From Macrostomum lignano (lineage: Eukaryota), in NCBI GenBank assembly GCA_002269645.1, contig NIVC01000822.1:310001-374000 (forward strand): a stretch of DNA of 64,000 bases. Reading direction: 5' to 3'. The notes below the pieces were generated by a model that was not told the DNA's origin, ran no database searches, and saw nothing but the letters and a program-made list of their open reading frames with translations. A program made the translations under genes and the position numbers. This document shows, piece after piece, positions 4,847-64,000 of the stretch (the stretch's first letter is position 1; each line of letters starts with the position of its first letter).

Positions 4847-5029
4847 ATGGGTTTGGCGCGCTAACATTTTTTGTTAAATGCGCTGTCATGTTTTTATGTT
4901 TCTGCAAATTGTAGCTGTGTTTTTTCAGTGTCATTTTTTCATACTCTCAATGCTAGATTAGGTTAACTGAAACAAGAAATTTTTTTTATTTTTTCAAATA
5001 TTAACGTACTTTTTGTGCGCGAAGTTCCT

Positions 5030-15727: not shown

Positions 15728-15838
15728 CCGGCCCCGCGCCCTAGCCTATGCGGGTTTTTCAGGGATTAGCGAAATGGGCGACGCTCGCCTCCCCGCTGCG
15801 TCTTCGGACCGCCCTGCAGCTAAGTCAAGTAAGTCAAG

Positions 15839-17064
15839 CGGCTAAGACTGCCCGCCGTCTAGCTGACGCTGGCATTCGAATCCAGCCCCATAGGGCCATG
15901 GCTAAGCGCAAGCTTCTGCCCCACGCCGACCTCTGCCTCAAGGACTTGAGAGACAGCGGCGGGCTCCACGTCCTATCTGACGGCGAACCCCGCACTCTCA
16001 ACCTCTTTCAGCGCTACAAGATCACCATGCCCTCTAGGGATGCTGCCAATGACCACTGGAATTTCCAGGAGGTCCATTGCTACACGGACGGATCCATCAA
16101 AGACGGTCGCGCCGGCTTTGGGGTCTGCTTCATCATCAACGGCCGCGTAATTGCCACGCATGCCCAGCACACTGGTAGACTCTCCACAGTCTTCGAGAAC
16201 GAAGTCCTTGCCATCAGCTCTTGCGCTGCAGAGCTGAACGCCAAGGGTACGAGAGGAAAGACTATTGTCATCTACTCCGATGGCCAAGCGGCCTTACAGG
16301 CCCTTTGCCACACCAAAACGAACTCCCGGACAGTCGCCGACTGCGCTCGGCAGCTCAACCTCCTGGCCAGTAGCAATACTGTCAGGCTGAAGTGGATCCC
16401 AGGGCACGCAGGGTTTCCGGGGAACGAGCTGGCAGACACCCTCGCCAAGAGGGGCGGCTTTGGCTCTTTCTTCGGCCCTGCCCCCCCCCCGGTCCCTATG
16501 CCCTTGACAGTCATCAATCGTCAGATCGACGACTGGGCTGACTCCCTCCACAGGGACAGATGGGCGGGCACCCAAAACTGCCCCGGTAATCTCGTGCCGC
16601 GGTTCCTTGCCCGTCTCGCAGGCTCAGAAACATCCTTCTGAACCAGAATCGGAAGGATATTCGAGCCCTTGTCATGACCCTCACGGGCCATGGCTACCTC
16701 GCCAGGCAATGCTTCCTCCGAGGTGACCTCGAGAGCGAATTTTTCCCCTTTTGCGAGTGCGACAATGAAGATGCTCAGCACTTTGTTCGTCACTGCCCTT
16801 TCTTTACCAGAGACCGGCTACGCTACCCGTCTTGACGAGGTTTGCCAACCCGACAGCATCTCACGGCTCATCCAGTTCCTTCGGGTGACTAGACGAGCCA
16901 ATTTCTTCCCAACGGAAGATCACGCTGCAGGACGGACCGGCGGACCACCCTGACCGGCCCCACGCCTCTGCCTGTCTGCGGGCCTTCAGGGGCTAGCGGA
17001 ATGGGCGACCCTCGCCTCCCCGCTGTGTCTACGGACCACCCTGCAGCTAAGTCAAGTAAGTCAA
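15839..17064 (+). mobile_element. 5'-truncated second LINE of a diverged subfamily (RNase H, zinc knuckle, 3'UTR, (TAAGTCAAG)2 tail)
   Basis: Colinear with 14605-15838 but with many substitutions; 'CYTDGS', 'WIPGHAGFPGNELADTLAK'; identical tail. Confidence 0.9.
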
Positions 17065-18411: not shown

Positions 18412-21400
18412 TTAAGAGAACAGCCATTTGGCTAGCCTCTCGATACCTCCTCGGATGTACGCAGTGATGCCATAGACGCTCGTCGGCTTCGGAAAAAACT
18501 CTTCGTACCTGCGGTAAACTCGGGTCTCGGTCTGCAGGAGTACGTTCAGCAGCTCGTCCTTGCCTAGGTTCTCAGCTCGGACAGCGAGCTCTCGAATATC
18601 CAGCAGTTGTTGGATTCGGTCGCGATACCCATCATCCTTGCTCATCTGCTCGGCGTCAATCAGCTTGTCAATGTAGTCAACCTCGTTCAGAGGGTCAGGC
18701 TTCAGAGCGATCTGCTGCAGGCGCCCGATGCACTTTTTGCTCTCCTTGACCAGCTGCATCACGTTGGCCTTCATCCCGAGGTACTCCTCATACACCCGCT
18801 GCGCCAGCTGCTTGGCCGACAGCAGTTTCCCCTCCGCATCGGTGTAGCGACCTTTCAGGTCATCCGACGTCTTTGTAACAGTTTGCTGAGTAATAACAAA
18901 TTTGTATGTCATGTTCTTGTGGACTGACCATACACAACCACTTTCGCACACGTGGCAATGGCCATCTTTCATCGCCACGCAGTGAATTTTGTCTGCATCG
19001 TCGGATAACGCACATGGATAGTGGCACGTCCTGTTGCACGTTAGACAGTTCGTGATGTAAGTTCCGGAAGGAATCGGCTGGCAGACTGCTGTGTCTTCCA
19101 CCACTGTGTATGTGAAGTTGCGGTTACGGTCCAAATCTGACTGGTGAGCCTTGATAACGGATATTTCGCGCTCCAGCTGATTCAACTTGTTCAGACCTTG
19201 ATCGATCTCCGCCTTGATGGCAATTAAGTGAGTCTGCAGTCTCTGTCGCTCACTCAGAACATCTTTGGTCAGGGTCAGGCTCTTTGCCGTAATCTTCATC
19301 AAGTGGGAGAAAAATCCTTGAAAGCTGTTTATTCCCATATCCCAGAACATTCTGTTGAACATTTGGCTCGTCTGGTCCATTTCCTGACACTTGGCAAATA
19401 CAGCAGAGTTGTTGAATTTGATGTGTAAATTGTAGCAGATCCTCGCTTCCTTAAGGGACTCGAGTACAGGAGGTATATTTGCATCAGCAAATGTGATTAG
19501 CATGTAGATGTTTTCGCCAATATCCTTACCGAACAGAGAGAGGATCGAGTCGAAAACGTATCGCTGCGTTGGCGTCAGTCTGGCGACACTCGAAGGCACC
19601 ACAAAGCCCACAGCATCCAAGTGATCAATGCCACTTGGACAAGAGAAGAACTCTCTGATTCGGTCGACAATCTTCTTGTCGTTCATGATGCCGCCAGTGT
19701 CACCAAATCCTGGCGTGTCCACCAGAGTCAACGAGCAAGGTTGCTGACAGCCATCGCGATGGTGAAATGTGTAGGATGTGACCCATTGAGTTTGACTCAT
19801 TGACTGAAATGTCTTAAGTTTCTTTTCCTTTGGATCTGTAACGACTCTGAAGCGAAACGGGTCTTCGTACTTCACACCGAAGATGTAGTTGACCATCGAG
19901 TTGATCAGAGTAGTTTTTCCAGAGCCAGTTTCACCAACGATCATAATCACTTTCTCATCAAATCCGGAGAAACTATCGCGTCCGAACTCCATTTTCCGAA
20001 CTTGGTGCACTGGATCACAGAACGTCTGGTCCATTTGCAACTCGTACTCAAGAGGCGGCGTAGCCTCAGAATCTAGTTTTAGAGAAGAGTTGAGCAAATT
20101 ATACTTCATTCTGTCCGCTAATGTCGATTTTACTTCATGGGTGACATTCCTTCTCTGCTCTCCAACAGAGTTATCTGAGAGCACTGCTGAAGCAGAAAAT
20201 GCACAGCAGCCATCTCCATTGACTTCGATGGGAACAGTCTTTTGCGAAGGATCAGCCTTAACATAAGTCTCATGGCCTGAGCTGTGTCCCTGCTCGAGCA
20301 CAGTGATTCGATAACCAACCAGACGGGCTTTTTGCTGCTGCAACACAGGCGGAGTCAGCTCTAGTTCCACACGAAATGGGGACACCTGCGTAACTGAAGC
20401 AATGTCCGGAGCGGCGCATGCCAATGTTGTCACCATCGGCAGATATTTCACTTCGCAGCGACCGAACATCCGAATGGTCTGATAGGACACCTGATAGGCG
20501 GTACCCATTTTCAACTGCTCAAGTCGAGCAATTCCACCGTTTGAGCCAAAGTTTTTGATGAGCTCCATCCACTCATTGCTGTGTTCTTCCTTGTAGCGAA
20601 TCGACACACCTTGAACTTCGTTTTCTTTAAAATCAGCAGCTCTCAGAGGTGAAAATAGCAGCTCAATTGCATTTGACACAGAACGCACGGAGCCAACAGA
20701 AAGGGATGCGGAAAAACTCTCAATAGAGAATAATATTGAGTCCAGGCGTTCAAGTACAATATGAGCACGAATTATTTTTTCGGCTTGCTGTTGCAACTTT
20801 ATGCAAAGATGCCAATCGTCTTGTTGATCATTAGCCTCAATTACTTTTAGCATAGCTTGCAAACTTTGGGTACAATCTTTGAGAGCAGTCGCAAGATCGA
20901 AATCCTCCCATTGCAGCAACTTTGGTGCGTTGGTTGGAAATACCAACGACACGGTGCAGCAGGTCTTGCCACCAGCTGGTTCAAAAGCTTTCGATTTTGA
21001 CAGCTGCGTTATAGCCGTTAAGACATCGAGAAACTCACCCAGCATTGGCAACCAGCTAAAGCTGGGAACGAAAGGAATGCAGTCCTTCAGAGATGCGGGT
21101 GTCTGGGTGCTGTTTCTAACTCGAACTTTGTTCACTGTAACATTATTCTGCACAAACTGCAAAGCTGTAGTCAGTGTTTTGCGTAGATACGGAACATCAT
21201 GTAGCACTTTGTAGCCCAGAAGCTCCTCAATACTTCGAGCCACCTTCTGACCTTCGTATAGCCGCTGCAGCACATCTGCACTGGTATTACACCCTTGAAC
21301 GGAACTCTGCTGCTTGCTGGCATCAAAAACTTTAAACAGATTGGCAGCATGAAGTGGTCCTTCGGGAGCAGCATCCATTTTTTCAAGAGAGTCTTTAAAC

Positions 21401-22021
21401 TCAGACAGACCCATTAGTATTACGGTGCCATTTAAAAATGTTTTAATCTTGGCCGTTTCAATGTCGCCATCGCCTGAAAATGAAAACATGGAACAACTAG
21501 TGAAAATTTAAAACAAAACATATTCTATGCTTTAATATCTTAGCGCGACATCAAAGGGTCGTACCTTTCACGATTCCACACAGCAGCCACCCTTGCGACA
21601 CGCAGGATACTTCACCGGGCTTTACACCTCCCTGATCAACTGCACTGGCAGAGACGCATTTTTCTTGGAGAACGCCTATCACTAGCTGCTTGGAGAAGTC
21701 GCAGTTGTCCCACAGGTAATGCAGCAGGTCTTGAAGCGAGCAGTTGACATTACTCGTACTTGGCGATGCGTGGCAAATAAGCTTCAGAGCCTGCAGAGAA
21801 GTCAGGCCGAGAGCAGCGACATCGCTTAGAAATGTGTCCGAGCTGTCAAAGAATATTTCTATTTTTTTGTTGCTGACCGCATCCTTGAGTCTGAACTCTG
21901 CTCCAGGGGAGGAATCGCCATGCGAACTCTCAATAAAGCTGTCCGACTCTACTGAGTATTGCTGACCCAGGTTAACTTGTCTGTCAAATGAATGCAGCCA
22001 AGCAGATTGACGGAATGACAT
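18412..22021 (-). CDS. Two-exon gene join(21565-22021,18412-21473), about 1172 aa: stonustoxin-like N-terminal domain + 2 FN3 + septin/AIG1-like GTPase + Cys-rich insert + coiled coil
   Basis: GT-AG intron 21474-21564 (91 nt, phase 1) joins ORFs 21551-22021 and 18412-21489 in frame. N-terminal 'SFDRQVNLGQQYSVESDSFI' resembles the SNTX ALGRPFxLGMLYDxRxD start (lower confidence). FN3-like 'YKEEHSNEW...LEQLKMGTAYQV'; G1/G3 motifs. Confidence 0.8.
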
Positions 22022-23399
22022 TTTTACTTCTGAAATATGATCATTGTGTTTAGAATTTAATATTCAATCAAGATTTTTTTGTATGAAACAGACACACAGG
22101 ACAGTTGGGTGTCTTAAATTCATTTACCACACTTTCCCAGATCTCCGTTTACCATCGGTTTTGAAATGCATGAAATTTTTTCCAAACCAATAGAACTAAT
22201 TTTCTGAAATCGATCCCATGCCTAGAAACAAACAACTCATTTTTAGTATATCACACTTACTATTAGGTTCTACCTATCTAAACCCTTGTTTAAATCATGA
22301 TATGTTCAAAAGAATTCAAATAATTTTTAGGGCTTCCCAAATTGAATATTTAAATTTTTTAGCAAAATTTAGCAACATTTTTTTGAAAAAGGTACTTTTG
22401 ATACGAAACAAAGTATGCATCAAACCTTAATTTAATCTAATAAATTTATAAACACGGCTGATTTTCTAATGATACATATTCGTTTCACTCATACTAACAT
22501 TTCTAGTGATAAGTGACAACCATATAATATATAAGACAAGGAAAATGTCTAAGTTTAATTCTATTATCTAAACATAACCTAAGATTAGGAATAATGTTAT
22601 CTACTATCCACCAACTTTAAGTGGTGTTTTATTCAAACTGTTAGTCTTTGCTCAAAAGAAATGTTCACACAGCATTGCAACGCAATCTGCAGTTGGGCCA
22701 TCACTGATTCACGATAACAAAATAATACATGTAGGTCATTTAAAATGATTCGGGGAAATTGGTTTCAGCGGTATTGTAAACCTGCTTTTACGCTTATGAA
22801 ATTGTTTAAAGTAAAAAAGTCGAATATTATATCCTACTATTTACTTATATTTTCTTTATTCTAAAACGATAAACATCCTCGCTATAAAAATAAAAGGCAT
22901 TAGCTCGTATAAAGATAATCAGATCTTGGTTTTGAATGACCACACTACTTAAGTATTCAAATGCATAAATACATACAGTGAATAGGTAGTTGAGTAGATA
23001 AATAAGTGTATAAATTAATCAGCAGAGGACTCAGTAGTGACTTATTTTTTATCCACGTACAACGTGCAAGTAAATCATTTGAAAACGATGCACAAAATCC
23101 AAAAGTGGTTTTAAATATGCAAGTTTGTACGCGGATTAACAAATATCAACGCACCGTTTTTATTACGTAGCTTTGCTTGAAATAAAATCGGTGGAATTTT
23201 TATATAATTTTTTTGTTTATTTTTGCACAAAATATAGACCTCGAGAATCGTATTTTCGCATTGAATAATAATGAGCATTTCAACTGCTCATTGAAAAGAT
23301 TCGCTTTCGCCAAAATGGATTTTTCCGTTTTAAAGCCCTGATTTTAGGTTAGGCGCACTCAAGATTCTATATTAGTGGGATCAACTGAAACCAGATCTA

Positions 23400-24450
23400 G
23401 CCAAAGTGAAGGCAATTCAGGACATGACACCACCACAGAATGTCAGTGAACTTGAGTCCTTCCTGGGTCTCGTTAACTTCAGCGGAAAGTTCATCAGAAA
23501 CTTAGCTGCACTGACCAAGCCGCTTAACCGCCTAAGGAAGAAAAATGAGGATTATGTGTGGACAACGGAGTGCCAGGGAGCATTCGACAAAATCAAGGCT
23601 GCACTCTCCGATCAATCGAGTCTCCAAATATTCGACCCCGAGAAGCCGATTGAACTGGAATGCGACAGTTCTCAGCGAGCTCTAGGTGGAGTGTTGACAC
23701 AAAGCGACCAAGTCGTGCTATACATGAGAAAAACATTGTCTGAAGCTGAGACAAAGTATTCGCAAATAGAACAGGAAGGTCTTGCATTGGTTTGGTGAAT
23801 TCAAAGATGTCATCGGTTCTTGTACGGCCGGAAGTTCACACTGATAACCGACCACCGACCGCTCACTTTTTTATATTCGCACCAGACATAGAGTTGCCGA
23901 CCAGAGTTTCAGTTCGATTGCTTTAGACACTTAGAGACAAATAAGAACTGTAGACACTCGTGGCCAGAACCGGATAATCCCTGGGAGCGAGTACACATCG
24001 ACTTCGTCGGCCCAATAGAAGAAAAATACCTACTCATACCTACTCATTGGATGCATACTCGAACTACCCCGAAGTGTTCATAACAAACGACATGAAGGCC
24101 CAGACAGTTATCACAAGACTTCGAAGACTATTCTCACAGTTGGGTGATAGTGTATCGTATCTGATAATGGCCCCAGCTTTGTTAGTGAAGCCGCGACCGG
24201 CTGGCTGGCCCAGATTGGCTGTGCGCACATCACAGCGCCCGCCCACCATCTCCAGAGCAACGGGATTGCAGAGCGGATCGTGAGGACTGTCAAGGACGCA
24301 ATCAAAACATCAAAACAAACGGTTTTTCGCAAAGGAGCATTGACAGATTCCTATTGTACTACAGAGCAGCCAAAGGGAAGCAGCATGCATCACCTTCCGA
24401 GCTACTGAACGGCAGGAAAATCCAACTGCCGATGTTGGAGAGCAAGGCTC
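23400..24450 (+). mobile_element. Degenerate Gypsy-type LTR retrotransposon pol (RT C-terminus, RNase H, integrase)
   Basis: 'VKAIQDMTPPQNVSELESFLGLVNF', 'ECDSS..ALGGVL', 'SEAETKYSQIEQEGLALVW', 'VHIDFVGP', 'DAYSNYPEV'. Confidence 0.85.
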
Positions 24451-40327: not shown

Positions 40328-40443
40328 TGTCTGTCTGTCTGTCTGTATGCCTGTCTGTCTATTTGTCTGTCTGTCTGTCTGTCTGTATGCCTGTCTGTCT
40401 ATTTGTCTGTCTGTCTGTCTGTATGCCTGTCTGTCTATATGCC

Positions 40444-40474
<31 letters not shown>

Positions 40475-40586
40475 ATGCCTGTCTGTCTATTTGTCTGTCT
40501 GTCTGTCTCTGTCTGTCTGTCTGTATGCCTGTCTGTCTATTTGTCTGTCTGTCTGTCTGTATGCCTGTCTGTCTGTCTGTCTGTCC
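40328..40586. repeat. (TCTG)n compound microsatellite
   Basis: TCTG/TATG/CCTG units. Confidence 0.9.
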
Positions 40587-40786: not shown

Positions 40787-41149
40787 ATGGCTCCCCGACG
40801 TGAGAAGAAAAAGAGCGCCCTAAAAGACGTGGTGACCCGGGAGTACACCATCAACCTGCACAAGCGCATTCACGGCGTCGGTTTCAAGCGCCGGGCGCCG
40901 CGTGCAATGACGGAGATTCGCAAATTCGCGGAGAGAATGATGGGCACCCCGGACGTGCGGCTGGACACCCGGCTGAACAAGTTCGTGTGGAGCCAAGGCG
41001 TCCGCAATGTGCCGTTCCGCGTCCGCGTCCGCCTGGCCAGGAAGCGCAACGAGGACGAGGACAGCGCGCACAAGCTGTACACCCTGGTCTCCTACGTGCC
41101 CTGCGCCGAGTTCAAGGGCAAGCAGACCATCAATGTTGAGGCCGAGTAG
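40787..41149 (+). CDS. RPL31: 60S ribosomal protein L31 (intronless CDS, 120 aa)
   Basis: '[26 protein letters not shown]...[38 protein letters not shown]'; ATG 40787 preceded by acceptor-like CCCAG at 40771-40775. Confidence 0.97.
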
Positions 41150-41364
41150 TGCGAGGTTAAACTTGACTAGATGGGACTGACTTGCTGATAGATTGCGAGG
41201 GCAGGTTCTTGATTGAGCATGAAATACAGGGGCTGACGCTGTTGAGCGTGTTTTTAGCTGGATTGCACTGTCTCTGCGCTTGTTCTTTACTTTCATATTA
41301 TTTAGAGAGCATCTCTACCTGTGCTTGTGGCTTGTGATTAGTTCTAGAAAGGTAGTTGCTGTGC

Positions 41365-41852
41365 CAGCCTCCCAGATCCTCAGTTGCTGGGCCACCAGCC
41401 TCCCAAATCCTCAGTTGCTGGGCTATCGCCCTCCCAGACCGTCAGTTGCTGGGCCAGCCTTCCAGATCCCCAGTTGCTGGGCCAGCCTTCCAGATCCCCA
41501 GTTGCTGGGCCAGCCTTCCAGATCCCCAGTTGCTGGGCCAGCCTTCCAGATCCCCAGTTGCTGGGCCAGCCTTCCAGATCCCCAGTTGCTGGGCCAGCCT
41601 TCCAGATCCCCAGTTGCTGGGCCAGCCTTCCAGATCCCCAGTTGCTGGCTGGGCCAGCCTTCCAGATCCCCAGTTGCTGGGCCAGCCTTCCAGATCCCCA
41701 GTTGCTGGGCCAGCCTTCCAGATCCCCAGTTGCTGGGCCAGCCTTCCAGATCCCCAGTTGCTGGGCCAGCCTTCCAGATCCCCAGTTGCTGGGCCAGTCT
41801 CCCAGATCCCCAGTTGCTAGGCCAGCCTTCCAGATCCCCAGTTGCTGGGCCA
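41365..41852. repeat. 28-bp minisatellite (GGGCCAGCCTTCCAGATCCCCAGTTGCT), about 17 copies, between RPL31 and MRM1
   Basis: Directly visible tandem units. Confidence 0.95.
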
Positions 41853-41923
41853 CCGTCACATTCCAACTTTCGAATCTCCAACATTTCACCGACCGGCTTC
41901 TTTAGACAGCCCTTTTTCTCCAG

Positions 41924-44900
41924 CTCCTACTGCGACCGTCAGCTGCCCGACTGTCGCTGCTGCTGTGCCGCAGGTTGTTCAGCAACAGCGGCGGCGGCGG
42001 CTCCGAGCTGGTGTACGGCATTCACCCGGTCTGGCAGGCGCTGTTGTCTCGCCGTCGTCGAATTGACGAAATCTACGTTGACATTCGACACCAAGGGCAA
42101 AGCGACGTCATAGAAGACTTCGGCTGCGACAGCTCCAGCTCGGCCGAGCTGCGCCAGCTCATCGCTGCCAGCTATGCTCACCTGGTCAGGTACGCTGACA
42201 GGCGCGAACTGGCCGCTCTGTGCCGGGGTCGGGCGCATCAAGGATTCGCGCTGCGGTGCGGACACTTCCCTGTGCCTGTGCTGCCCGGCTGTGCCTCCGA
42301 CTGCCGCTCTGAGCTGGCGGCGAGTCGGCTGTGTGTGCTGCTGGACCAGGTGGGGAAGAGATGCAGGGGAGAATGGGGAAGAGATGCAGGGTGAATGGGG
42401 AAGAGATGCAGGGTATAATGGGGAAGAGATGCAGGGGAGAATGGGCAAGAGATGCAGGGTATAATGGGGGAGAGATGCAGGGTATAATGGGGAAGAGATG
42501 CAGGGTAGAATGGGGAAGAGATGCAGGGTAGAATGGGGAAGAGATGCAGGGTATAATGGGGAAGAGATGCAGGGTAGAATGGGCAAGAGATGCAGGGTAT
42601 AATGGGGGAGAGATGCAGGGTATAATGGGGAAGAGATGCAGGGTATAATGGGGAAGAGATGCAGGGTAGAATGGGCAAGAGATGCAGGGTATAATGGGGG
42701 AGAGATGCAGGGTATAATGGGTGAGAGATGCAGGGGAGAATGGGCAAGAGATGCATTGGAGAGAATCGGCAAGAGATGCATTGGGGAGAATCGGCAAGAG
42801 ATGCATTGGGGAGAATCGGCAAGAGATGCATTGAAGAATGGGCAAGAGACGCATTGGAGAGAATCGGCAAGAGATGCATTGGAGAGAATCGGCAAGAGAT
42901 GCATTGGAGAGAATCGGCAAGAGATGCATTGGGGAGAATCGGCAAGAGATGCATTGGAGAGAATCGGCAAGAGATGCATTGGAGAGAATCGGCAAGAGAT
43001 GCATTGGAGAGAATCGGCAAGAGATGCATTGGAGAGAATCGGCAAGAGATGCATTGGAGAGAATCGGCAAGAGATGCATTGGAGAGAATGGGCAAGAGAT
43101 GCATTGGAGAGAATCGGCAAGAGATGCATTGGAGAGAATCGGCAAGAGATGCATTGGAGAGAATCGGCAAGAGATGCATTGGAGAGAATCGGCAAGAGAT
43201 GCATTGGAGAGAATCGGCAAGAGATGCATTGGAGAGAATGGGCAAGAGATGCATTGGAGAGAATGGGCAAGAGATGCATTGGAGAGAATCGGCAAGAGAT
43301 GCATTGGAGAGAATCGGCAAGAGATGCATTGGAGAGAATCGGCAAGAGATGCATTGGAGAGAATCGGCAAGAGATGCATTGGAGAGAATCGGCAAGAGAT
43401 GCATTGGAGAGAATCGGCAAGAGATGCATTGGAGAGAATCGGCAAGAGATGCATTGGAGAGAATCGGCAAGAGATGCATTGGAGAGAATCGGCAAGAGAT
43501 GCATTAGAGAGAATCGGCAAGAGATGCATTGGGGAGAATCGGCAAGAGATGCATTGAAGAATGGGCAAGAGATGCATTGGAGAGAATCGGCAAGAGATGC
43601 ATTGGAGAGAATCGGCAAGAGATGCATTGGAGAGAATCGGCAAGAGATGCATTGGAGAGAATCGGCAAGAGATGCATTGGAGAGAATCGGCAAGAGATGC
43701 ATTAGAGAGAATCGGCAAGAGATGCATTGGAGAGAATCGGCAAGAGATGCATTAGAGAGAATCGGCAAGAGATGCATTGGAGAGAATCGGCAAGAGATGC
43801 ATTGGGGAGAATCGGCAAGAGATGCATTGAAGAATGGGCAAGAGATGCATTGGAGAGAATCGGCAAGAGATGCATTGGAGAGAATCGGCAAGAGATGCAT
43901 TGGGGAGAATCGGCAAGAGATGCATTGAAGAATGGGCAAGAGATGCATTGGAGAGAATCGGCAAGAGATGCATTGGAGAGAATCGGCAAGAGATGCATTG
44001 GAGAGAATCGGCAAGAGATGCATTGGAGAGAATCGGCAAGAGATGCATTGGAGAGAATCGGCAAGAGATGCATTGAAGAATGGGCAAGAGATGCATTGGA
44101 GAGAATGGGCAAGAGATGCATTGGAGAGAATCGGCAAGAGATGCATTGGAGAGAATCGGCAAGAGATGCATTGGAGAGAATCGGCAAGAGATGCATTGGA
44201 GAGAATCGGCAAGAGATGCATTGGAGAGAATCGGCAAGAGATGCATTGGAGAGAATCGGCAAGAGATGCATTGGAGAGAATCGGCAAGAGATGCATTGGA
44301 GAGAATCGGCAAGAGATGCATTGGAGAGAATCGGCAAGAGATGCATTGGAGAGAATCGGCAAGAGATGCATTGGAGAGAATCGGCAAGAGATGCATTGGA
44401 GAGAATCGGCAAGAGATGCATTGGAGAGAATCGGCAAGAGATGCATTGGAGAGAATCGGCAAGAGATGCATTGGAGAGAATCGGCAAGAGATGCATTGGA
44501 GAGAATCGGCAAGAGATGCATTGGAGAGAATCGGCAAGAGATGCATTGGAGAGAATCGGCAAGAGATGCATTGGAGAGAATCGGCAAGAGATGCATTGGA
44601 GAGAATCGGCAAGAGATGCATTGGAGAGAATGGGCAAGAGATGCATTGAAGAATGGGCAAGAGATGCATTGGAGAGAATCGGCAAGAGATGCATTGGAGA
44701 GAATCGGCAAGAGATGCATTGGAGAGAATGGGCAAGAGATGCATTGGAGAGAATGGGCAAGAGATGCATTAGAGAGTATCGGCAAGAGATGCATTGGAGA
44801 GTATCGGCAAGAGATGCATTGAAGAATGGGCAAGATCACATGAATCAGCACGCACCCGCAGGTGGTGGACATCCTTAACTTCGGCAGTCTGCTCCGCACC

Positions 44901-45350
44901 TGTCTGTTCTACGGTGTCAGCCCGGTGCTCATACCGGGCACCCACAGCTGCCCCCCTCTGCCAGTGGTCTCCAAGGTGAGCTGCGGCGCTCTGGAGGCCA
45001 CGGACTTGCGCGCCCTGCCCGCCAGCAGCGCTGAGTTTGTGCGCCAATGGCGCCAGGCTGGCTGGCTGGCGCTAGGCAGCTCGGGAGGCGATGACGGCGC
45101 CCCTGGAGTGCCTTGCGCCGGCGTCGATCGGCTGACGGAGCTGCTGCCGCATCCGCCCAGCGGTCCGGTGCTTCTGCTGCTTGGCAGCGAGGGCTCCGGC
45201 CTGTCAGCTGAGCTTCTGAGCCTCTGCAACCTGGTGCTGCGGATTCCACAAGCTGGCGCCGCCTGCGCCATGCCGCATCTGAATGTGGGAGTGGCGGCCG
45301 GCATCCTGCTGCACTGCGTCTCGGGCTGGCTGCGGTCTGCTGCTGCCTGA
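41924..45350 (+). CDS. MRM1: Mitochondrial rRNA methyltransferase 1 (SpoU/TrmH family), join(41924-42349,44862-45350); no genomic ATG in the first exon
   Basis: 'LVYGIHPVWQAL', 'HQGFAL', spliced 'LLDQ|VVDILNFGSLLR', 'LLLGSEGSGL', 'HLNVGVAAGILLH'; GT-AG intron 42350-44861; N-terminal Arg/Leu/Ser-rich presequence-like segment after acceptor TTTTTCTCCAG (41923). Confidence 0.85.
42350..44835. repeat. Intronic minisatellite: 23-bp units grading into 25-bp units (CATTGGAGAGAATCGGCAAGAGATG), about 100 copies
   Basis: Fills almost the whole MRM1 intron. Confidence 0.95.
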
Positions 45351-45377: not shown

Positions 45378-45462
45378 TTGCCTGTCTGTCTGCCTGTCTG
45401 CCTGCCTGTCTGCCTGCCTGCCTGCCTGTCTGTATGTCTGTCTGTCTGCCTGCCTGCCTGCC

Positions 45463-45518
<56 letters not shown>

Positions 45519-45582
45519 CCTCTATTTGTGTCTGTCTGTCTGTCTGTCCCTCTATTTGTGTCTGTCTGTCTGTCTATCTATA

Positions 45583-45625
<43 letters not shown>

Positions 45626-45670
45626 GTCTGTCTGTCTGTCCATCTATCTGTGTCTGTCTTTGTCTGTCGT
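45378..45670. repeat. (TCTG/CCTG)n microsatellite downstream of MRM1
   Basis: Directly visible. Confidence 0.9.
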
Positions 45671-46032
45671 CTGACTGTGTCCTGTCTGAGGATTTGTGGT
45701 TTTTAACCTGTCTAAATTCTGACTGGGCTTTCTCACCTCTGCTCTATACTTCACTCCCTGCCCTCTCTTCTATTGAAGCCTCCCCTCTCACTTCTACGGT
45801 ATCTTCCTGGTTTTATACTAGATCTATAATGATGCATTTTTCCAATCCAAGCGTTTTTAAATGTAATTAATAACGAAGGAATAATCATATGAAAGTCGAT
45901 TTTTGCGCCAGGATAGTTTTCATTGTTATACTCTTTTTTTTACATTTTTTCATTTGTACCGATTTTTTTCGTTTTAAGAATTAATAGATGAAATATTGAA
46001 CTCGCTTTCAGAGAGACCAGAGCATCCCCACA

Positions 46033-48610
46033 ATGGCCGCTTTCTTAGACAGACAGCGAACTAACCAAAATAATAATAATTACTACTATTGCGATCCCGA
46101 GTCTCAGTCCGCACTGCAGTTGCCCATGGCAACCAGCTTTGCCACCACCGATGTTGCCTCCTCGCTGGATGACAGCCTCCTGCTGCCTCCGGATGCCTTC
46201 CTGCCGTCGGCTGCCGCTGCGGCGCCGCACTCGGTTCGGTTTGTCCCTGCCGACGCCCCTCCTGCGGCGGCTCCGTGCCGCTCCTGCCGGCAGCTGGAGC
46301 GCGACCTCGCCCGGCAGCGTCGAGAGTTGGAGCGGCTGCGGCGGCAGCAGCTGGAGACGCAGAGCCTGCTGGATCAGGAGAGGCAGCAGCGGATGGAGCT
46401 GGCTGAGCCAACGCCGCGGGTGAGCCGAGCGCCTGTTGATGTACAGACAAATCTTTTGAGTATTAGTGTCTGTAGATATTGAGCAGACATCTGTAGGCAC
46501 ATGTTTTGAGCGGTAGAAAATCAGGAATCTATAGGCGCCTGTAGATCTGCAGCGGGTTTTTCTATAGACATGTGTAAACAGAAGCTTAAATCTATAGGGC
46601 ATCGTGGTTACACAGGTCTCTATAGACTCGTGGATCTCCAGATATCTCTAGGTATCTATAGACACGTGTAGATCTACAGCAGGCATCTATAGACACTTGT
46701 AGAGATCTATAACACTTTTCTATAGACGCTTGTAGATCAATGGCAAGCATTTATGAACACTTGTACGTCTATAGCCGACGTCTACAGAGATATTTAGATC
46801 TACAGTAGGAATTTATAGACACATGTTGATGTACAGCAGGCATCTATGGACACATGTAGATCTATACCACGTCTCTATTGACGCTTGTAGATCTATGACA
46901 GGCATCTATAGACACATGTATATCTACAGACACAGAGATGTAGATCTATGACAGGCATCTATAGACACATGTAGATCTACAGACACAGAGATGTAGATCA
47001 ATGACAGGCATCTACAGACACAGAGATGTAGATCAATGACAGGCATCTATAGACACATGTAGATCTATTCGATTGTCAAGTTGTTTCTCACAACCTAGAC
47101 TGCTTTACAATGCAGGACTGGGACGACAGTCGCGACGCCCTGGCCACCAGAGCCGCCCAGCTTGAGGCTGAAAACGAACGCCTTCGAGCCGACGCTGAGC
47201 TTCGGGAACGCCGGCTGGCCCTGCAGTCCGAGCTGCTTGCCGAGCCCAGCGCTGGCGGCGAGGCTGCGGCCTGGAGGCCCCGGCTGTACAAGGCGCTGGT
47301 GCAGGCCGAGGCTGAGCGCTGGGCGCACGACAGACAGCTGAGACAGACGGTAGGTGGGGCAGACAGACAGGCAGACAGACAGACACTAGGACAGACAGGC
47401 AGGCAGACATGGACACTAGGACAGACAGGCAGGCAGACATGGACACTAGGACAGACAGGCAGGCAGACATGGACACTGAGGCACACTCAAAGGTCACTGA
47501 GAGTCCCAATCCCCACCCCTGTAGGAGGCCGAAGCCGAGGCCGCAGTTTCCGACCTTCGCCGCCGCCTAGACGAGGCGGAGGCGCGCGCTGCGGCCGCCG
47601 AGCGCAAGCTGGCCGCTGCGGACCGGCTGGCGGAGCGGCTTCAGTCGGACGCCCGGCGTCTGGCAGAGCGTCGGGCGCGAGAGGCGAGCGAAGCGGCCGA
47701 GGCTGTTAAATCGGCCAGGGCAGCCTTCGAATCTGCGGCCGGGCTGTGGATGGAGCGCCTGGCCGACATGGAGGGGCGCCTCGGCCGCCTGGCCGACACC
47801 ACCGACCAGCTGGCCGCGTCCGAGAAGGTGCGGAGGCGGCATGTTTTACTGTCTGATTTAATAGTCTCAATCTTACCCACTTGGTTAATCTCACTCCTAA
47901 ATTGTCAATCTCACCCCACTCCATCAATCTCATCCCACTCCATCAATCTCATCCCACTCCATCAATCTCATCCCACTCCATCAATCTCATCCCACTTCAT
48001 CAATTTCTCCCACTCCATCAATCTCACCCCAGTCCATCAATCTCATCCCACTCCATCAATCTCATCCCAGTCCATCAATCTCACCCCAGATCGTCAATTT
48101 CACCCCAGTCCACCAATCTCACCCCAGTCCATCAATCTCACCCGCTCGCAGCTGTCCGAACTCTCCTCGGTGTCCGAGCTTCGCGCCGCCCTGTCCGAAA
48201 CTCGATCAGCGCTGGACTCGGAGCGCCAGGCGCGCCGCCTCGAAGCTGGGCGCCACGCGGACGCGCTGGACGCGTCGGCGCGCGAGCAGGCGAAGCTGGC
48301 GGCCGCGCTGGCCCAGTCGGAGCGCCGGCTGCAGCGGGAACGCGAGGCCGCCGAGGCTCAAGGCCGTCAGGCTGTTGAAGACTTTCAGCTGGCCACGGAG
48401 CGACTGCGGGATCGGCTGCGCCTGGTGGAGGGCGAGCGGAACCTCCTGCAGGCCGCGGCGGCGGCGGCCGCCTCAGAGAAGCAGCAGCAGCGAGCAGCGC
48501 GCCCGCACTCGGCGATGCCTGTCGCCGGGTCCGCCATCGAGGAGTCCGAGGACCCGCGACTGCATGCCGCTGTTCGCGACTTGAGACAGATGCTGGCCAA
48601 CTCCGGCTGA
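46033..48610 (+). CDS. Coiled-coil protein, CCHCR1-like; join(46033-46419,47116-47349,47525-47827,48152-48610), about 460 aa
   Basis: Four exons joined in phase 0 by GT-AG introns; 'RRLALQSELL...WRPRLYKALVQAEAERWAH' resembles the CCHCR1 WREKVFALMVQ motif (family call about 0.5); acceptor TTTCAG at 46011. Confidence 0.75.
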
Positions 48611-50029: not shown

Positions 50030-50389
50030 GGCCGTAGTCTAGCGGTCTAGCGCGGCGCTCTGATATGCCAGCGGTCCCAGGCTCGATTCCGAGTGCAGTC
50101 ACATTAATCTGAGGCTAAATTGGAATCTCGGCTTGGCTCTGCTCGTGCAATTAGCGCCCTTGAAGGCCCACCCCCATGGCGCAGTGAAGTGTACATGCCT
50201 AGCGATAAATAAAGTTAGGGCCGCTGTACACTCCTGTGTGAGTGTGCGTATGACTGCGTACGTATCCGCGCGCTTGTGTGCCTGCTCAGGGGAGTCGGCG
50301 GAATGGGCAGTAATGCCTCTCTCCGGTTGTGCGACAATGTCGCTTGAAGTGCGCCAGGGTGCACAGAGCATCCCTGTCTCTAATAAAAA
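50030..50389 (+). mobile_element. tRNA-derived SINE (copy 2)
   Basis: A-box TAGTCTAGCGG, B-box-like GGCTCGATTCC, body homologous to 2230-2595, ends TAATAAAAA. Confidence 0.8.
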
Positions 50390-51060
50390 CTAGGTAGACA
50401 GGTAGATAGATAAGCAGATAGGTAGGAAGGTAGATAAATAGGCAGGTAGATAAATAGGCAGGTAGATAAATAGGCAGGTAGATAAATAGGCAGGTAGATA
50501 AATAGGCAGGTAGATAAATAGGCAGGTAGATAAATAGGCAGGTAGATAGATAGGCAGGTAAGATAGGTAGGCGGATAGACAGGTAGATAAATAGGCAGAT
50601 AGGTAGGAAGGCAGACAGGTAGATAGGCAGATGGGTAGGAATTGGTAGATAGGTAGGAAGGTAGATAGGCAGATAGGTAGGAAGGTAGATAGGCAGATAG
50701 GTAGGAATTGGTAGATAGGCAGATAGGTAGGAATTGGTAGATAGGCAGATAGGTAGGAATTGGTAGATAGGTAGATAGGTAGGAATTGGTAGATAGGCAG
50801 ATAGGTAGGAATTGGTAGATAGGCAGATAGGTAGGAATTGGTAGATAGGCAGATAGGTAGAAATTGGTAGATAGGCAGATAGGTAGGAATTGGTAGATAG
50901 GCAGATAGGTAGGAATTGGTAGATAGGCAGATAGGTAGGAATTGGTAGATAGGCAGATATGTACAAGGTACGCAGGTAGATAGGTAGGCAGGTAAGATAG
51001 GTGTATAGAAATGCAGATGGGTAGGAAGATAGGCAGGTAATGTAGATAGACAGACATAGA
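50390..51060. repeat. Compound (GATA/GGTA/GGCA) micro/minisatellite
   Basis: Directly visible; starts at the SINE tail. Confidence 0.9.
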
Positions 51061-51574
51061 CATAGGTAGTTAGATACATGTTGTAGCTAGATGTAAGGTA
51101 AGACGGACAGACAGCAGATCGCCATGTTACAGACGCCATGCATTGTCCAAGACTTCGGTATCCAGTTCCAACCAGGTTCCCGACCGCAGAGGTTCGGGAA
51201 TAACCAGCCGTTTCGAAAGACTGCTGTTATTCAGCTATCAGAAGTCGTAAATTGAAGCGTTTCCGCTGGATTTTAGCACAGCTGAGCTGATAAATTAGGC
51301 GCTCGTAATCAGGCGGTGCTGATCGATAAAAAATATCCTTGAATTCAGCCTGAAATCAGCTTGTTAGGGCGCTGCCGCCCTGATATGCAGGCCGATTCTG
51401 GGGTGCCTTGAGCAATAAATGCCAATTTAATATTTGGATAAAAGTTGCGCTTCACCTGTTTTATGGGCGAAAATCCGTTTTTGTGCTGTGTCTGCGCCTA
51501 AAAATCTTGTCTATCTGCCTATCTATGTCCGTCTGTCTATCTATGTGTCTGGCTATGTGTCTATCTGTGTCTGT

Positions 51575-61290: not shown

Positions 61291-61780
61291 TCACACGTAG
61301 TTCTCAATGGCCTCCATGTTGGACTCGAGGTGCGGCGTCAGCGGCGACGCCACGAAGGTCGGCTGCTGCTGCAGGCTGTGCAGAGCGGCGCCGATGTCCG
61401 ACAGGCCGCCGTTGCCGGCAACGATGCGAAATCGCCGCCGCCGCCACCTCCGCCGCCGCTGGGGAACGCGAAGGCCGTCTCAGCGGTGGCGCTAGTGACC
61501 GGCGGCGCCGAAGAAGCGCCAGTTGCTGCTGGCGTTGACGTCGCAGCCGCACTGGAGGTCGCCGGGATGACGCTGAAGCCGCTGCGGCTGCTCGCCAAGG
61601 AGATGCGGCTGCTGTACCTGATCAGCTCCGTTGCGCCCGCCGGAGTCTCCGACTGGACCAGGTCGGGCGTCAGCATCCTGCCGTGCTGCTGCTGCGGCTG
61701 CTGGCTGTTCAGGAGCCGTTGCTAGTGCCGTTAGTCGCTGGCGGGAGGCGGCGGCGGCAGCTGCCATCATCAACATGTGG

Positions 61781-61829
<49 letters not shown>

Positions 61830-64000
61830 CGGCCAGGTGATATGAGTAGTACGACGGGTGCAGCGGCGCCTCCTGAGCCGACATCCGGGAGCCCGGCGAG
61901 AAGCCTCCGCCGCCGCCGCCGCCACCATAGCCGTAGCCGCCGCAGACGCCGCCGTTGCCGCAGCCGCAGTCGGAGCCCAGGGCCGGGGGCGGCGGGCAGT
62001 AGTAGCCGTCCTGCGGTGCCATCCCGCTGGACAGGCTGGCGCGGTAGCCCAGCTGCACCGCCTGGCCGCACACCGGGTGGCCCGCAGCGATGGCCGCCGG
62101 CGAACCGCCCGACCCGTTGGTGACGTCGCTGGAGTTGGTCGACCGCATCGACTTGCCGACGCCCGGGCCGCCGCCTCCGTCGCCGCCGCCGCGACGGCAC
62201 TGCAGGATGGCGGTGACGATGACCGCGGCCAGCAGGATGGCCACCACCACGGCGCTGCCGATGGAGATGCCAGCACGATCTCGAAGGACAGGCCGGCGCT
62301 GGCGGTGCTCGCCTGAGTGGTCGACGCGGCGGCATTCAGCGGGCGTCGAAGCTGCGGGTCTCGTAGACGGTGACCGGGCCGTCCAGCACCAGCAGGGAGA
62401 AGCTGTAGGCCGCCTGCGGGTCGGGCAGCAGGATGCTGGCGCGGCCTGAGCGGACCTCCGACTCCAGCAGCTGTCGCAGGACGCAGCCGGGCTGCACAGC
62501 TTCACGTACACCCCGGTGTAGTGCGGCGACATCGGCGCTGTGAACTGGATCTCCAGCTGCCCGGAGGTCACCTGGGCCGCCACCGATGCGTCCGGGATCA
62601 GCGGCAGCTTCCGGGTGGTCAGCGCCACCTCGTCGGTGAAGGGGCTGACGTTGATCGCGCCGCCGTAGAAGTTCTCTGCTCGGACTCGCGCATAGTAGGT
62701 GGCCTGCGACTCCAGCGCGGTGACGGTCTCGGTGACGGGCAGGCCGAAGCCGGGGTCCCGCAGGCCGGTCTTCTGGTTGGCGACGCTCCACACGGAGCTG
62801 CCGAGCGGCCGCCACTGCAGCGTGAAGGTCTGCTCGAAGCCGCCGTTGAATTCACTGCGCCAGCGCAGGTTGGCGGACACCGCCGTGGTGTTCAGCACCT
62901 GCAGGCCGCTGGGGGTGGCGGGCGGCCCCGGCCGGTTCAAGCTGAAGGTGAAGTCGCGAGTGCCGACTGAGTTGGCCACGGTGCACACATAGTTGCCGTA
63001 GTCAGCCGAGGTCACCTCCGGGATGACGAGGCGGTAGGTGAGGTTCACCGCGCTGCTGACGGTGGACAGGCGCGGGTTCAGCGCCTGCTTGGTGCCATCG
63101 GCTCCGAGGCGCTGCCAGACGGCCCCGCTGGGCGGCGGGTTGGCCGTCACCCGCAGGAGCAGCTCGGCCGGCTGTCCGAGTGGGGAAGACACGGCCAACT
63201 GGGTGCCCGGCCAGGCGGCCGGGGCGAAGGTCAGGTTAAGGGCGGCCGAGGCTGTGGCGGAGCCACCGCGGGACCCCACCGAGCACTGGTAGACGCCGTT
63301 GTCTCCTGAGCTGGCCGACGCGATGCTCAAAGTGGACGTTGCGCTGGCGAGCGTCGCCCAGACGCCGCTGGCATTCCGATGTCGCCATACGAAGGTGAAG
63401 CCGCCGCCTGCCGTCGGGACTCCCGCCGGTTGTCAGGCAGCTCAGCGTCACCGGGTCGCCTTCGCGAGGCGAGCTGGGCGACACTGTGACGTTGACGGAT
63501 GGCGGGTACAGCACCAGCACGGAGGTCGACTTGGACAGGGCGCCGATTGCGGCGCTGTCGTAGACGATGGTGCAGGTGTACACCGTGCCGTTGTCTGCCC
63601 GCCTGGTCTGCGTGACGAGCAGGCGGCTGCTGACTGCAGTGCCGAGGTTCTCCGCCGGCTCCGTCGTTGCCACCGCCTGCACGGTGACATTCTCGGCCGA
63701 GCTGGCGCCGCCGCGGACTGCCGGAACCAGTGCACCCGGGCTGGCGGGTTCGCGGAGCCGGCGCGGCACAGCAGGGTCAGCGCCGTGTTCTCCAGCACCC
63801 CGTCGGCCGGGCTAGCCGTCAGCGCGGAGCTGCTCGGCAAAAATTTCACCTCCAGGGCGACGTCTTTGCGGCCGATCTCGCGCGAGTTGTACAGCAGGAC
63901 GCAGCGGAATTTGAAGCCGTTGAGGTCGCGGCTGGCGGCGATGTCCAGCCGGCTCTGCAGCTGCTTGGCCGAGTTCGGCCCGTCTGTCTGGCTGACGGAC
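61291..64000 (-). CDS. Ig-superfamily adhesion receptor (nephrin/sidestep-like: several Ig domains, FN3, TM, polyQ tail); 5'-truncated by the window and broken by several single-base frameshifts
   Basis: 'TLLCRAGSANPPARVHW', 'DNGTVYTC', 'DNGVYQC', 'DYGNYVCTVANSVG', FN3 'LRWRSEFNGGFEQTF', TM 'IGSAVVVAILLAAVIVTAIL'; manual translation of the last frame ends 'MEAIENYV*' (TGA at 61291-61293). Confidence 0.85.

What the first reader, a model, noticed from the sequence alone, without database searches (positions are those of the whole stretch)
41900..42010. MRM1 lacks its own start codon: the spliced-leader AUG would supply Met1 of a mitochondrial presequence
Seen: the frame is closed by TAG at 41903; after acceptor 41923 it reads LLLRPSAARLSLLLCRRLFS with no ATG in the whole exon; the only two ATGs between RPL31 and the acceptor (41171, 41219) stop within 6 codons with no GT donor. 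Established: flatworm SL exons end in AUG, which can initiate translation. Inference: SL-AUG + CTC CTA CTG gives M-LLLRPSAAR..., a well-formed targeting peptide, making translation and mitochondrial import strictly dependent on trans-splicing.
Basis: partly seen in the sequence, partly recalled or inferred. Interest (0 to 1): 0.8.

Follow-up and report, generated by a model that had tools for sequence, protein, structure and literature searches.

The report
Start-codon-less MRM1 gene in Macrostomum
A flatworm (Macrostomum lignano) gene for a mitochondrial rRNA methyltransferase has no start codon of its own and most likely borrows the AUG at the end of the spliced leader, a mechanism already documented in flatworms; no RNA data could be reached to prove it for this gene.

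Summary
The window is Macrostomum lignano scaffold NIVC01000822.1. A two-exon MRM1/RlmB-type methyltransferase gene (41924-42349 and 44862-45350) lies 774 nt downstream of RPL31 on the same strand. Its frame is closed by TAG at 41903. A pyrimidine-rich acceptor (ccctttttctccAG, ends 41923) matches the published M. lignano trans-splice motif. The 304 encoded residues contain one Met, at residue 279. The intergenic region has only two ATGs; both stop after 5 codons and neither short ORF contains a GT. The published M. lignano spliced leader (SL) ends in ATG, which would be in frame and give M-LLLRPSAARLSLLLCRRLF|S, a presequence-like N-terminus.

The surroundings look like an operon, and the annotated CDS of the next gene starts exactly at its acceptor. 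A second genomic copy keeps the acceptor and an intact ORF (pN/pS 0.27). That copy also has an in-frame upstream ATG, probably derived, so "strictly dependent" applies only to the window copy.

I could reach no transcript evidence. SL-AUG initiation is the best explanation (about 0.6). Rivals are non-AUG initiation, a silent gene copy, and a distant cis exon. SL-AUG initiation is already known (Cheng et al. 2006), so this would be a new member of a known kind. Interest is modest.

The parts
40787..41149 (+). RPL31 (eL31) CDS, single exon; probable first gene of the operon, not trans-spliced
   Evidence: 100% to the window's own annotated protein P0086 and 97% to M. lignano BOX15_Mlig004813g1. 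The annotated CDS starts at 40778, upstream of the ATG, which suggests a transcript 5' end defined by a transcription start.
41150..41923 (+). RPL31 3' region plus MRM1 outron (774 nt; about 275 nt after subtracting the tandem repeat)
   Evidence: The only ATGs are 41171 and 41219; both stop after 5 codons and neither short ORF contains a GT. No GT[GA]AG donor occurs in this stretch.
41354..41852 (+). 28-nt tandem repeat, 17.5 copies, inside the outron; 13 units contain TTCCAG
   Evidence: Only about 2.4 units are present in the second genomic copy, L003.
41903..41905 (+). In-frame TAG that closes the MRM1 frame 7 codons upstream of the acceptor
   Evidence: The same position is CAG in L003.
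41910..41923 (+). Pyrimidine tract plus CTCCAG acceptor (ccctttttctccAG); proposed SL trans-splice site
   Evidence: It matches the [T/C]TNCAG motif reported for M. lignano trans-splice acceptors. It is identical in L003. Chance expectation is 0.01-0.03.
41924..41980 (+). Codons for residues 2-20 of the predicted presequence (LLLRPSAARLSLLLCRRLF), before the RLF|S R-3 type cleavage motif
   Evidence: 4 Arg and 0 Asp/Glu in the first 20 residues, first acidic residue at 29, LSLLL (phi-x-x-phi-phi) motif, RLF|S at residues 18-21. The two copies differ here by one synonymous and one P/T change.
41924..42349 (+). MRM1 exon 1 (142 codons; no in-frame ATG; SpoU_sub_bind domain)
   Evidence: GT donor GTGGGG at 42350.
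42350..44861 (+). MRM1 intron (phase 0), almost entirely a 25-nt tandem repeat (42356-44835, about 101 copies)
   Evidence: The intron is only about 340 nt in L003.
44862..45350 (+). MRM1 exon 2 (SpoU_methylase domain; stop TGA at 45348-45350)
46005..46011 (+). Acceptor (ctttcAG) of the next same-strand gene; the annotated CDS starts at 46012 and the first ATG is at 46033
   Evidence: the GenBank CDS begins at the first base after the AG. The published pipeline cuts transcripts at SL-read peaks, so this implies a mapped trans-splice site.

Best explanation
The window carries a Macrostomum lignano gene cluster, RPL31 -> MRM1 -> coiled-coil gene, that looks like an operon. MRM1 encodes the mitochondrial large-subunit rRNA 2'-O-methyltransferase, of the RlmB/SpoU type.

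Its pre-mRNA has no usable AUG. The mature mRNA is proposed to form when the 35-nt spliced leader is trans-spliced onto the acceptor ending at 41923. The leader's 3'-terminal AUG is the only AUG in the leader. It becomes the first AUG of the mRNA and sits directly in frame with CTC CTA CTG.... Scanning ribosomes would start there and make M-LLLRPSAARLSLLLCRRLF|SNSGGGG-(conserved domain). This is a roughly 20-residue arginine-rich presequence without acidic residues, followed by a Gly linker and the methyltransferase.

Shown: the gene structure, the absence of any cis AUG, the acceptor motif, the frame, the organism and its SL sequence (from the literature), and conservation in a second copy.

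Inferred: that this acceptor is used in trans, that the SL AUG initiates translation, and that the N-terminus targets mitochondria.
For: 1. Organism and SL. The window is M. lignano NIVC01000822.1. The published SL ends in ...TTGCATG and has no other ATG. The published trans-acceptor motif [T/C]TNCAG is matched by CTCCAG at 41918-41923.
2. No cis start. TAG at 41903 is in frame. The two intergenic ATGs are dead ends without a GT. The only consensus donor between the RPL31 ATG and the acceptor (GTGAG at 40800) would join out of frame. The only in-frame Met is codon 279 of 304.
3. The acceptor is unlikely to be there by chance: 0.01-0.03 expected. It is the only [T/C]TNCAG-type acceptor between the stop and the conserved domain. 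By my own reading of the sequence, the downstream AG sites at 41942, 41973, 41982 and 41988 are all out of frame.
4. Operon context. The three genes share a strand. Repeat-adjusted spacers are about 275 and 364 nt, against the 1 kb threshold used for M. lignano operons, and repeats are reported to inflate operon spacers. The next gene's annotated CDS begins exactly at its acceptor. Transcript ends were set from SL reads.
5. The gene looks functional. Both domains score above the Pfam cut-offs, and the G-x-E-G-x-G and IP..G..LNV motifs are kept. The second copy, L003, has an intact 915-nt CDS with 7 synonymous and 5 nonsynonymous differences (pN/pS 0.27) and an identical acceptor.
6. Presequence features.
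7. Precedent. The flatworm SL AUG is reported to serve as initiator, and more than 40 S. mansoni cDNAs are reported to require it (citing Cheng et al. 2006).
Against: - No transcript, SL-read, Ribo-seq or proteomic evidence for this gene could be reached.
- The gene is absent from the GenBank annotation of both copies. The published filter against repeat-overlapping transcripts may explain this, but expression is unproven.
- The Kozak context of the SL AUG is weak (U at -3, C at +4).
- In-frame near-cognate codons exist, one in good context (CUG 42008).
- The second copy has an in-frame genomic ATG (L003 10586) and lacks the TAG. Dependence on the SL is therefore not a fixed property of the gene family.
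- Thirteen repeat units upstream carry a TTCCAG that could compete as acceptors.
- Mitochondrial targeting was judged only by simple composition rules, not by a trained predictor.
Confidence: 0.6

Rival explanations
1. Non-AUG initiation. The mRNA, trans-spliced or not, is translated from an in-frame near-cognate codon in exon 1. A start at CUG 41930 or at the run 41951-41963 would keep part of the presequence. A start at CUG 42008 would give a protein that begins at the conserved domain with no presequence.
For: Nine in-frame near-cognate codons lie in the first 31 codons. CUG 42008 has G at -3 and G at +4. Non-AUG starts on SL-bearing mRNAs have been reported in other SL-using taxa.
Against: If the mRNA is trans-spliced, the SL AUG is met first by scanning ribosomes and is in frame, so near-cognate starts would be minor at best. 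The early CUGs have C or T at -3. A start at 42008 would discard a presequence-like segment that is kept almost unchanged in both copies, and a mitochondrial rRNA methyltransferase needs import.
Confidence: 0.13
2. The window copy is a silent or decaying duplicate. M. lignano is a hidden polyploid. The working MRM1 could be the other copy (L003, NIVC01001319.1), which has short repeats, no in-frame TAG and an in-frame genomic ATG. The window copy, with its expanded repeats, would then not be translated.
For: L003 has ATG at 10586 with an open frame into MRM1, and CAG instead of TAG. The window copy has a 17.5-unit outron repeat and a 2.5-kb intron repeat, against 2.4 units and 0.34 kb in L003. 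Neither copy is annotated. At about 3% divergence, an intact ORF is only weak evidence of function.
Against: The window CDS is fully intact over 915 nt, with pN/pS 0.27 against L003. The L003 ATG sits where all 18 window repeat units and the other two L003 units read TTG, so it is probably a recent T>A change and not an ancestral start. Its 46-residue extension is repeat-derived and not presequence-like: 1 Arg in the first 20 residues. It lies upstream of the conserved acceptor and would be removed by trans-splicing. Acceptor, donor and frame are identical in both copies.
Confidence: 0.15
3. Cis-splicing from a distant upstream exon that carries the ATG, in phase 0, with RPL31 lying inside the first MRM1 intron; or a chimeric RPL31-MRM1 transcript.
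For: The acceptor at 41923 is real-looking and could in principle be used in cis. Shared cis and trans acceptors are reported in parasitic flatworms.
Against: No ATG-bearing exon is possible in the 774-nt intergenic region. In the 12 kb upstream there are only two ATG plus phase-0 GT[AG]AG combinations, of 2 and 10 codons. Both lie in AT-rich non-coding sequence upstream of RPL31, which is what chance would give. The one consensus donor inside RPL31 (40800) joins out of frame. A same-strand gene nested in the first intron would be unusual.
Confidence: 0.05

Closest known systems
SL-AUG-initiated ORFs of flatworms (Cheng, Cohen, Ndegwa and Davis 2006, J Biol Chem 281:733; called 'slORFs' in PMC9851317)
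   Same: The flatworm SL ends in AUG. The AUG is joined in frame to an ORF that has no start codon of its own, so translation of the correct protein needs trans-splicing. More than 40 S. mansoni cDNAs are reported to need the SL AUG. The M. lignano SL has the same ...TTGCAUG end that I recall for the S. mansoni SL (the S. mansoni sequence is from my own knowledge; the M. lignano one is).
   Different: The documented cases come from cDNAs and translation assays in Schistosoma. This is a free-living macrostomid, the case rests on genomic sequence only, and the M. lignano trans-splicing paper does not discuss SL-AUG use. A second gene copy has acquired a genomic in-frame ATG.
Alternative trans-splicing that controls mitochondrial targeting in Trypanosoma brucei (isoleucyl-tRNA synthetase; PMC3273800)
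   Same: Where the spliced leader is added decides whether the mRNA encodes a mitochondrial presequence, so trans-splicing governs import.
   Different: By my own knowledge of that system, the start codons there are genome-encoded and the leader supplies no AUG; the choice is between two acceptors. Only the title and the start of the abstract were seen here.
MRM1 / Pet56 / RlmB family (SpoU-TrmH class 2'-O-methyltransferases of large-subunit rRNA)
   Same: SpoU_sub_bind plus SpoU_methylase architecture. Best named hits are vertebrate 'rRNA methyltransferase 1, mitochondrial' at 31-35% identity. It aligns end to end with E. coli RlmB, PDB 1gz0.
   Different: The N-terminal extension is only about 28 residues; vertebrate MRM1 hits are 327-430 aa overall, against 305 here. 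Motif 1 reads D-I-L-N-F-G instead of the usual D-P-x-N-x-G. No close relative exists in the 5.8-billion-cluster protein database.
M. lignano operons resolved by SL trans-splicing (Ustyantsev and Berezikov 2021, PMC8629364)
   Same: Same-strand genes, repeat-adjusted spacers under 1 kb, a first gene that is not trans-spliced followed by trans-spliced genes, and repeats inflating the spacers.
   Different: Operon membership is inferred here from layout and annotation boundaries only. SL-read and poly(A) tracks could not be consulted.

Membership tests
SL-AUG-dependent ORF (flatworm slORF) | The organism's spliced leader ends in AUG | tested here: met
   The published M. lignano SL is CGGTCTCTTACTGCGAAGACTCAATTTATTGCATG. 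The organism was identified. No SL RNA gene lies in the window itself.
SL-AUG-dependent ORF (flatworm slORF) | The mRNA is SL trans-spliced at the proposed acceptor | not testable with these tools
   Only indirect support is available: motif match, pyrimidine tract, no upstream cis donor, and operon context. No RNA data were reachable.
SL-AUG-dependent ORF (flatworm slORF) | The SL AUG is in frame with the conserved ORF, with no stop in between | tested here: met
   The exon starts at 41924 in phase 0 and the frame is open through to the SpoU_sub_bind domain.
SL-AUG-dependent ORF (flatworm slORF) | No genome-encoded in-frame AUG upstream of the conserved domain | tested here: met
   Met for the window copy: TAG at 41903 and the first in-frame Met at codon 279. 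Not met for the second copy, L003, which has an in-frame ATG at 10586 that is probably derived.
SL-AUG-dependent ORF (flatworm slORF) | Translation actually starts at the SL AUG | not testable with these tools
   This needs initiation profiling, N-terminal proteomics or a reporter assay.
MRM1 / RlmB (SpoU-TrmH rRNA 2'-O-methyltransferase) | N-terminal SpoU_sub_bind domain plus C-terminal SpoU_methylase domain | tested here: met
   PF08032 at 31-34 bits (cut-off 22.8) and PF00588 at 73 bits (cut-off 29.7).
MRM1 / RlmB (SpoU-TrmH rRNA 2'-O-methyltransferase) | Closest named relatives are MRM1 rather than other SpoU enzymes | tested here: met
   The top named hits are 'rRNA methyltransferase 1, mitochondrial' from vertebrates (E 1e-27 to 1e-19), followed by bacterial RlmB. 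The best PDB hit is E. coli RlmB, 1gz0. No reciprocal or phylogenetic test was done.
MRM1 / RlmB (SpoU-TrmH rRNA 2'-O-methyltransferase) | Mitochondrial localisation through a cleavable presequence | tested here: inconclusive
   Composition rules fit: 4 Arg, no acidic residue before position 29, an RLF|S motif and a phi-x-x-phi-phi motif. No trained predictor and no experiment.
M. lignano SL-resolved operon | Adjacent same-strand genes with a repeat-adjusted spacer under 1 kb | tested here: met
   774-499 = about 275 nt, and 661-297 = about 364 nt.
M. lignano SL-resolved operon | Downstream genes carry mapped SL sites | tested here: inconclusive
   The third gene's annotated CDS begins at the first base after its acceptor, as expected if transcripts were cut at SL-read peaks. 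MRM1 has no annotation to check.

The most novel reading that the evidence does not exclude
The most novel reading not excluded: MRM1 in M. lignano depends obligately on the SL AUG for both translation and its mitochondrial presequence. It would be co-transcribed in an operon with the cytosolic ribosomal protein gene RPL31. Trans-splicing would then couple production of a mitochondrial-ribosome maturation enzyme to cytosolic ribosome gene expression. It would also be the first documented SL-AUG-dependent gene in a free-living, early-branching flatworm, which implies that the mechanism is ancestral to Platyhelminthes.
Probability: 0.35. Interest if true: 0.4.

Novelty: new member of a known kind. 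Interest (0 to 1): 0.3.

Why it matters
If confirmed, this would be a clean example from a free-living, early-branching flatworm of a conserved housekeeping gene that cannot be translated correctly without the spliced leader's AUG. That would extend a mechanism documented in schistosomes.

It also has a practical side. Gene finders that require a genomic ATG, or pipelines that trim the leader before calling ORFs, will miss or truncate such genes. MRM1 is in fact absent from the GenBank annotation of both copies. N-terminal targeting predictions will also fail unless the leader's Met is added.

It does not open a new question. The principle has been known since 2006.

Tried and rejected
- Exact-sequence look-up of RPL31 from its ATG: not on record. 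The annotated 123-aa form (P0086) and its paralogue (P0087) were found and gave loci L001-L004.
- Homology search for MRM1: nothing above 35% identity, so no Macrostomum protein or transcript-derived ORF is in the database.
- Rfam scan of the window: no match. Search for the SL sequence in the window with up to 3 mismatches: none.
- Supplementary tables of two M. lignano transcriptome papers, searched for MRM1 and RPL31: no occurrences.
- Cheng et al. 2006 is not in the paper library. It is cited only through papers that describe it.
- S. mansoni phytochelatin synthase was checked as a possible precedent for an SL-supplied Met on a mitochondrial isoform. Rejected: its start Met is in exon 2.
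- Two scans of metagenome contigs, one for the SL/exon-1 junction and one for exon 1 alone: nothing, as expected for an animal gene.
- Chimeric RPL31-MRM1 splicing from the GTGAG at 40800: rejected, because it joins out of frame (reading).
- Alternative acceptors: the TTCCAG sites in the 28-nt repeat either join out of frame or run into TAG 41903. By my own reading, the AG sites inside exon 1 (41942, 41973, 41982, 41988) all join out of frame.
- My first dN/dS run used an exon end that was off by one. It was redone.
- L001 and L002 (the RPL31 paralogue followed by RPS21 and NAC) contain no MRM1.
Full report
**What is there**

RPL31 (eL31) is a single-exon CDS at 40787-41149. After its stop come 774 nt of non-coding sequence, including a 28-nt tandem repeat at 41354-41852 with 17.5 copies. 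Next come an in-frame TAG at 41903-41905, the tract ccctttttctcc, and an AG that ends at 41923. From 41924 an ORF reads LLLRPSAARLSLLLCRRLFSNSGGGGSELVYGIHPV..., up to a GT donor at 42350. Exon 1 is therefore 41924-42349 (142 codons), one base shorter than I first noted. The intron (42350-44861) is almost entirely a 25-nt tandem repeat of about 101 copies. Exon 2 runs from 44862 to the TGA at 45348-45350.

Between RPL31 and the acceptor the only ATGs are at 41171 and 41219. Each stops after five codons, and neither short ORF contains a GT. Exon 1 has no in-frame ATG; it has one out-of-frame ATG at 42174. The complete 304-codon CDS has a single Met, at codon 279.

**Identity**

The spliced protein carries SpoU_sub_bind (PF08032) and SpoU_methylase (PF00588), both above the Pfam cut-offs. 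It aligns along its length with E. coli RlmB, PDB 1gz0. Its best named relatives are vertebrate "rRNA methyltransferase 1, mitochondrial" at 31-35% identity. Nothing closer exists in the 5.8-billion-cluster protein set.

RPL31 is 100% identical to an unnamed database entry (the window's own protein) and 97% identical to Macrostomum lignano BOX15_Mlig004813g1. Look-up of those proteins returned four M. lignano loci from assembly GCA_002269645.1. L004 (NIVC01000822.1) is the window itself: window coordinate = record coordinate minus 310000. L003 (NIVC01001319.1) is a second copy of the same three-gene segment. L001 and L002 hold an RPL31 paralogue followed by RPS21 and NAC, with no MRM1.

**Literature frame**

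The single M. lignano spliced leader is CGGTCTCTTACTGCGAAGACTCAATTTATTGCATG. Its trans-splice acceptors are enriched for [T/C]TNCAG. About 30% of genes are trans-spliced and about 15% lie in operons. Operon spacers peak near 100 nt once repeats are subtracted, and 1 kb is used as the threshold. About 18% of operons begin with a gene that is not trans-spliced (PMC8629364).

All reported flatworm leaders end in AUG. That AUG can act as initiator, and more than 40 Schistosoma mansoni cDNAs are reported to need it (PMC9851317 and PMC12582326, citing Cheng et al. 2006).

**Evidence for this locus**

1. CTCCAG at 41918-41923 fits the published motif, with 12 of 15 pyrimidines before the CAG. Sites of that quality occur at 0.27 per kb per strand in the window. 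About 0.03 are expected in the 105 nt between the last in-frame stop and the conserved domain, and about 0.01 in frame.
2. It is the only productive acceptor. The TTCCAG copies in 13 repeat units either join out of frame or run into TAG 41903. Reading the sequence directly, the AG sites inside exon 1 are all out of frame.
3. No consensus donor (GT[GA]AG) lies between the RPL31 ATG and the acceptor except GTGAG at 40800, which would join out of frame. In the 12 kb upstream there are only two trivial combinations of an ATG with a phase-0 donor, both beyond RPL31.
4. The layout fits an operon. The three genes share a strand, and the repeat-adjusted spacers are about 275 and 364 nt. The GenBank CDS of the third gene starts at 46012, the first base after gctttcAG. 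The same holds for RPS21 in L001 and NAC in L002. This is what the published pipeline produces when it cuts transcripts at SL-read peaks. RPL31's annotated CDS starts upstream of its ATG at a site that is not an acceptor, consistent with a first gene that is not trans-spliced.
5. MRM1 is missing from the GenBank annotation of both copies. The submitters removed transcripts that overlap repeat annotations, which could explain the absence without implying that the gene is silent.
6. With the leader's Met, the N-terminus has 4 Arg and no acidic residue in the first 20 positions, with the first acidic residue at 29. It has an LSLLL motif and an RLF|S arrangement of the R-3 type at residues 18-21, followed by GGGG and then the conserved domain. 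These are rule-of-thumb features, not the output of a trained predictor.

**The second copy**

L003 keeps the identical acceptor tract, donor, intron phase and an intact 915-nt CDS. There are 7 synonymous and 5 nonsynonymous differences: pS 0.028, pN 0.0076, ratio 0.27. Flanking non-coding divergence is 2.9-4.2%. This speaks for constraint, though the numbers are small.

L003 also differs in two instructive ways. The TAG of the window is CAG there. With only about 2.4 repeat units, an ATG at L003 10586 is in frame with MRM1 and would add 46 repeat-derived residues. That ATG sits where all 18 window units and the other two L003 units read TTG. It is therefore most simply a recent T>A change, not an ancestral start. 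Its N-terminus does not look like a presequence, and it lies upstream of the acceptor, so trans-splicing would remove it. Even so, "strictly dependent on trans-splicing" can be claimed only for the window copy.

**What could not be done**

I found no way to see RNA. The relevant proteins are not in the exact-match index. No Macrostomum MRM1 ORF is in the protein database. Supplementary tables of two transcriptome papers do not mention the gene. Two pattern scans of metagenome contigs were empty. Trans-splicing at 41923, initiation at the leader's AUG and mitochondrial import are therefore inferences.

**Verdict**

| Explanation | Probability |
|---|---|
| SL-AUG initiation | about 0.6 |
| Window copy is a silent duplicate | 0.15 |
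| Non-AUG initiation (CUG 42008 has a good context) | 0.13 |
| Distant cis exon carrying the ATG | 0.05 |

If true, the finding is a new member of a known kind: the first such case I am aware of in a free-living macrostomid, for a conserved mitochondrial ribosome-maturation enzyme. Its main value is as a clean test case and as a caution for annotation. Mapping SL-bearing reads from public RNA-seq to NIVC01000822.1:351924 would settle it in an afternoon.

Noticed in passing
window 41354-41852; L003 10584-10665: A 28-nt tandem repeat sits in the RPL31-MRM1 spacer, with 17.5 copies in the window and about 2.4 in the second genomic copy. Thirteen window units contain TTCCAG, which matches the trans-splice acceptor motif. 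SL addition at those units would give upstream ORFs that either run out of frame or end at TAG 41903. They could act as decoy acceptors.
   Followed up: partly
window 42356-44835; L003 about 11150-11450: The MRM1 intron is almost entirely a 25-nt tandem repeat, with about 101 copies in the window and about a dozen in the second copy. Two sub-variants (…GGGGAAGAGATGCAGGG… and …CGGCAAGAGATGCATTGG…) form separate blocks.
   Followed up: no
window 46005-46033; L001 11623; L002 12678: Three annotated M. lignano CDSs begin at the first base after a CAG acceptor and run in frame into the real ATG 7-10 codons later. The leader's AUG would be in frame in all three and would add short N-terminal extensions, for example M-RDQSIPT-MAAFL. 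The possible acceptor just before the RPL31 ATG (cgccAG|TCC ATG) would also be in frame. The sample is too small to say whether in-frame junctions are favoured.
   Followed up: partly
L001 11623-11660 versus L002 11626-11660: The two copies of the RPS21 5' region differ by a 1-nt indel, so their annotated CDSs start in different frames. This may be an indel error of the long-read assembly, and it is a caution for frame arguments in this genome.
   Followed up: no
window 40328-40585 and 45382-45678: Long (TGTC)n / (CTGT)n microsatellites lie just upstream of RPL31 and just downstream of MRM1, bracketing the gene pair. Similar arrays occur elsewhere in the window, for example around 50286-51139.
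   Followed up: no
window 3059-4843 (+) and 18415-21507 (-): These are inverted duplicates of an AIG1/septin-like P-loop GTPase gene. Stretches are identical (3440-3739 equals 19501-19800 on the opposite strand). The minus-strand copy has a 1031-codon open frame.
   Followed up: partly
window 12359-16638 (+), 4967-6890 (+), 23376-23795 (+): Transposable-element remains: a non-LTR retrotransposon (endonuclease, RVT_1, RNase H) followed by a second RNase H segment; a TNP/THAP9-like transposase fragment; and an LTR-type RT-RNase H fragment.
   Followed up: partly
window 61495-63811 (-): A large Ig (I-set) / fibronectin-III exon lies in a 70% GC stretch, much more GC-rich than the rest of the window.
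   Followed up: no
L001 and L002 versus L003 and L004: RPL31 exists as two paralogue types (94% nucleotide identity) in different neighbourhoods: RPL31-RPS21-NAC and RPL31-MRM1-coiled-coil gene. Each type is present twice, consistent with the hidden polyploidy described for this species.
   Followed up: partly
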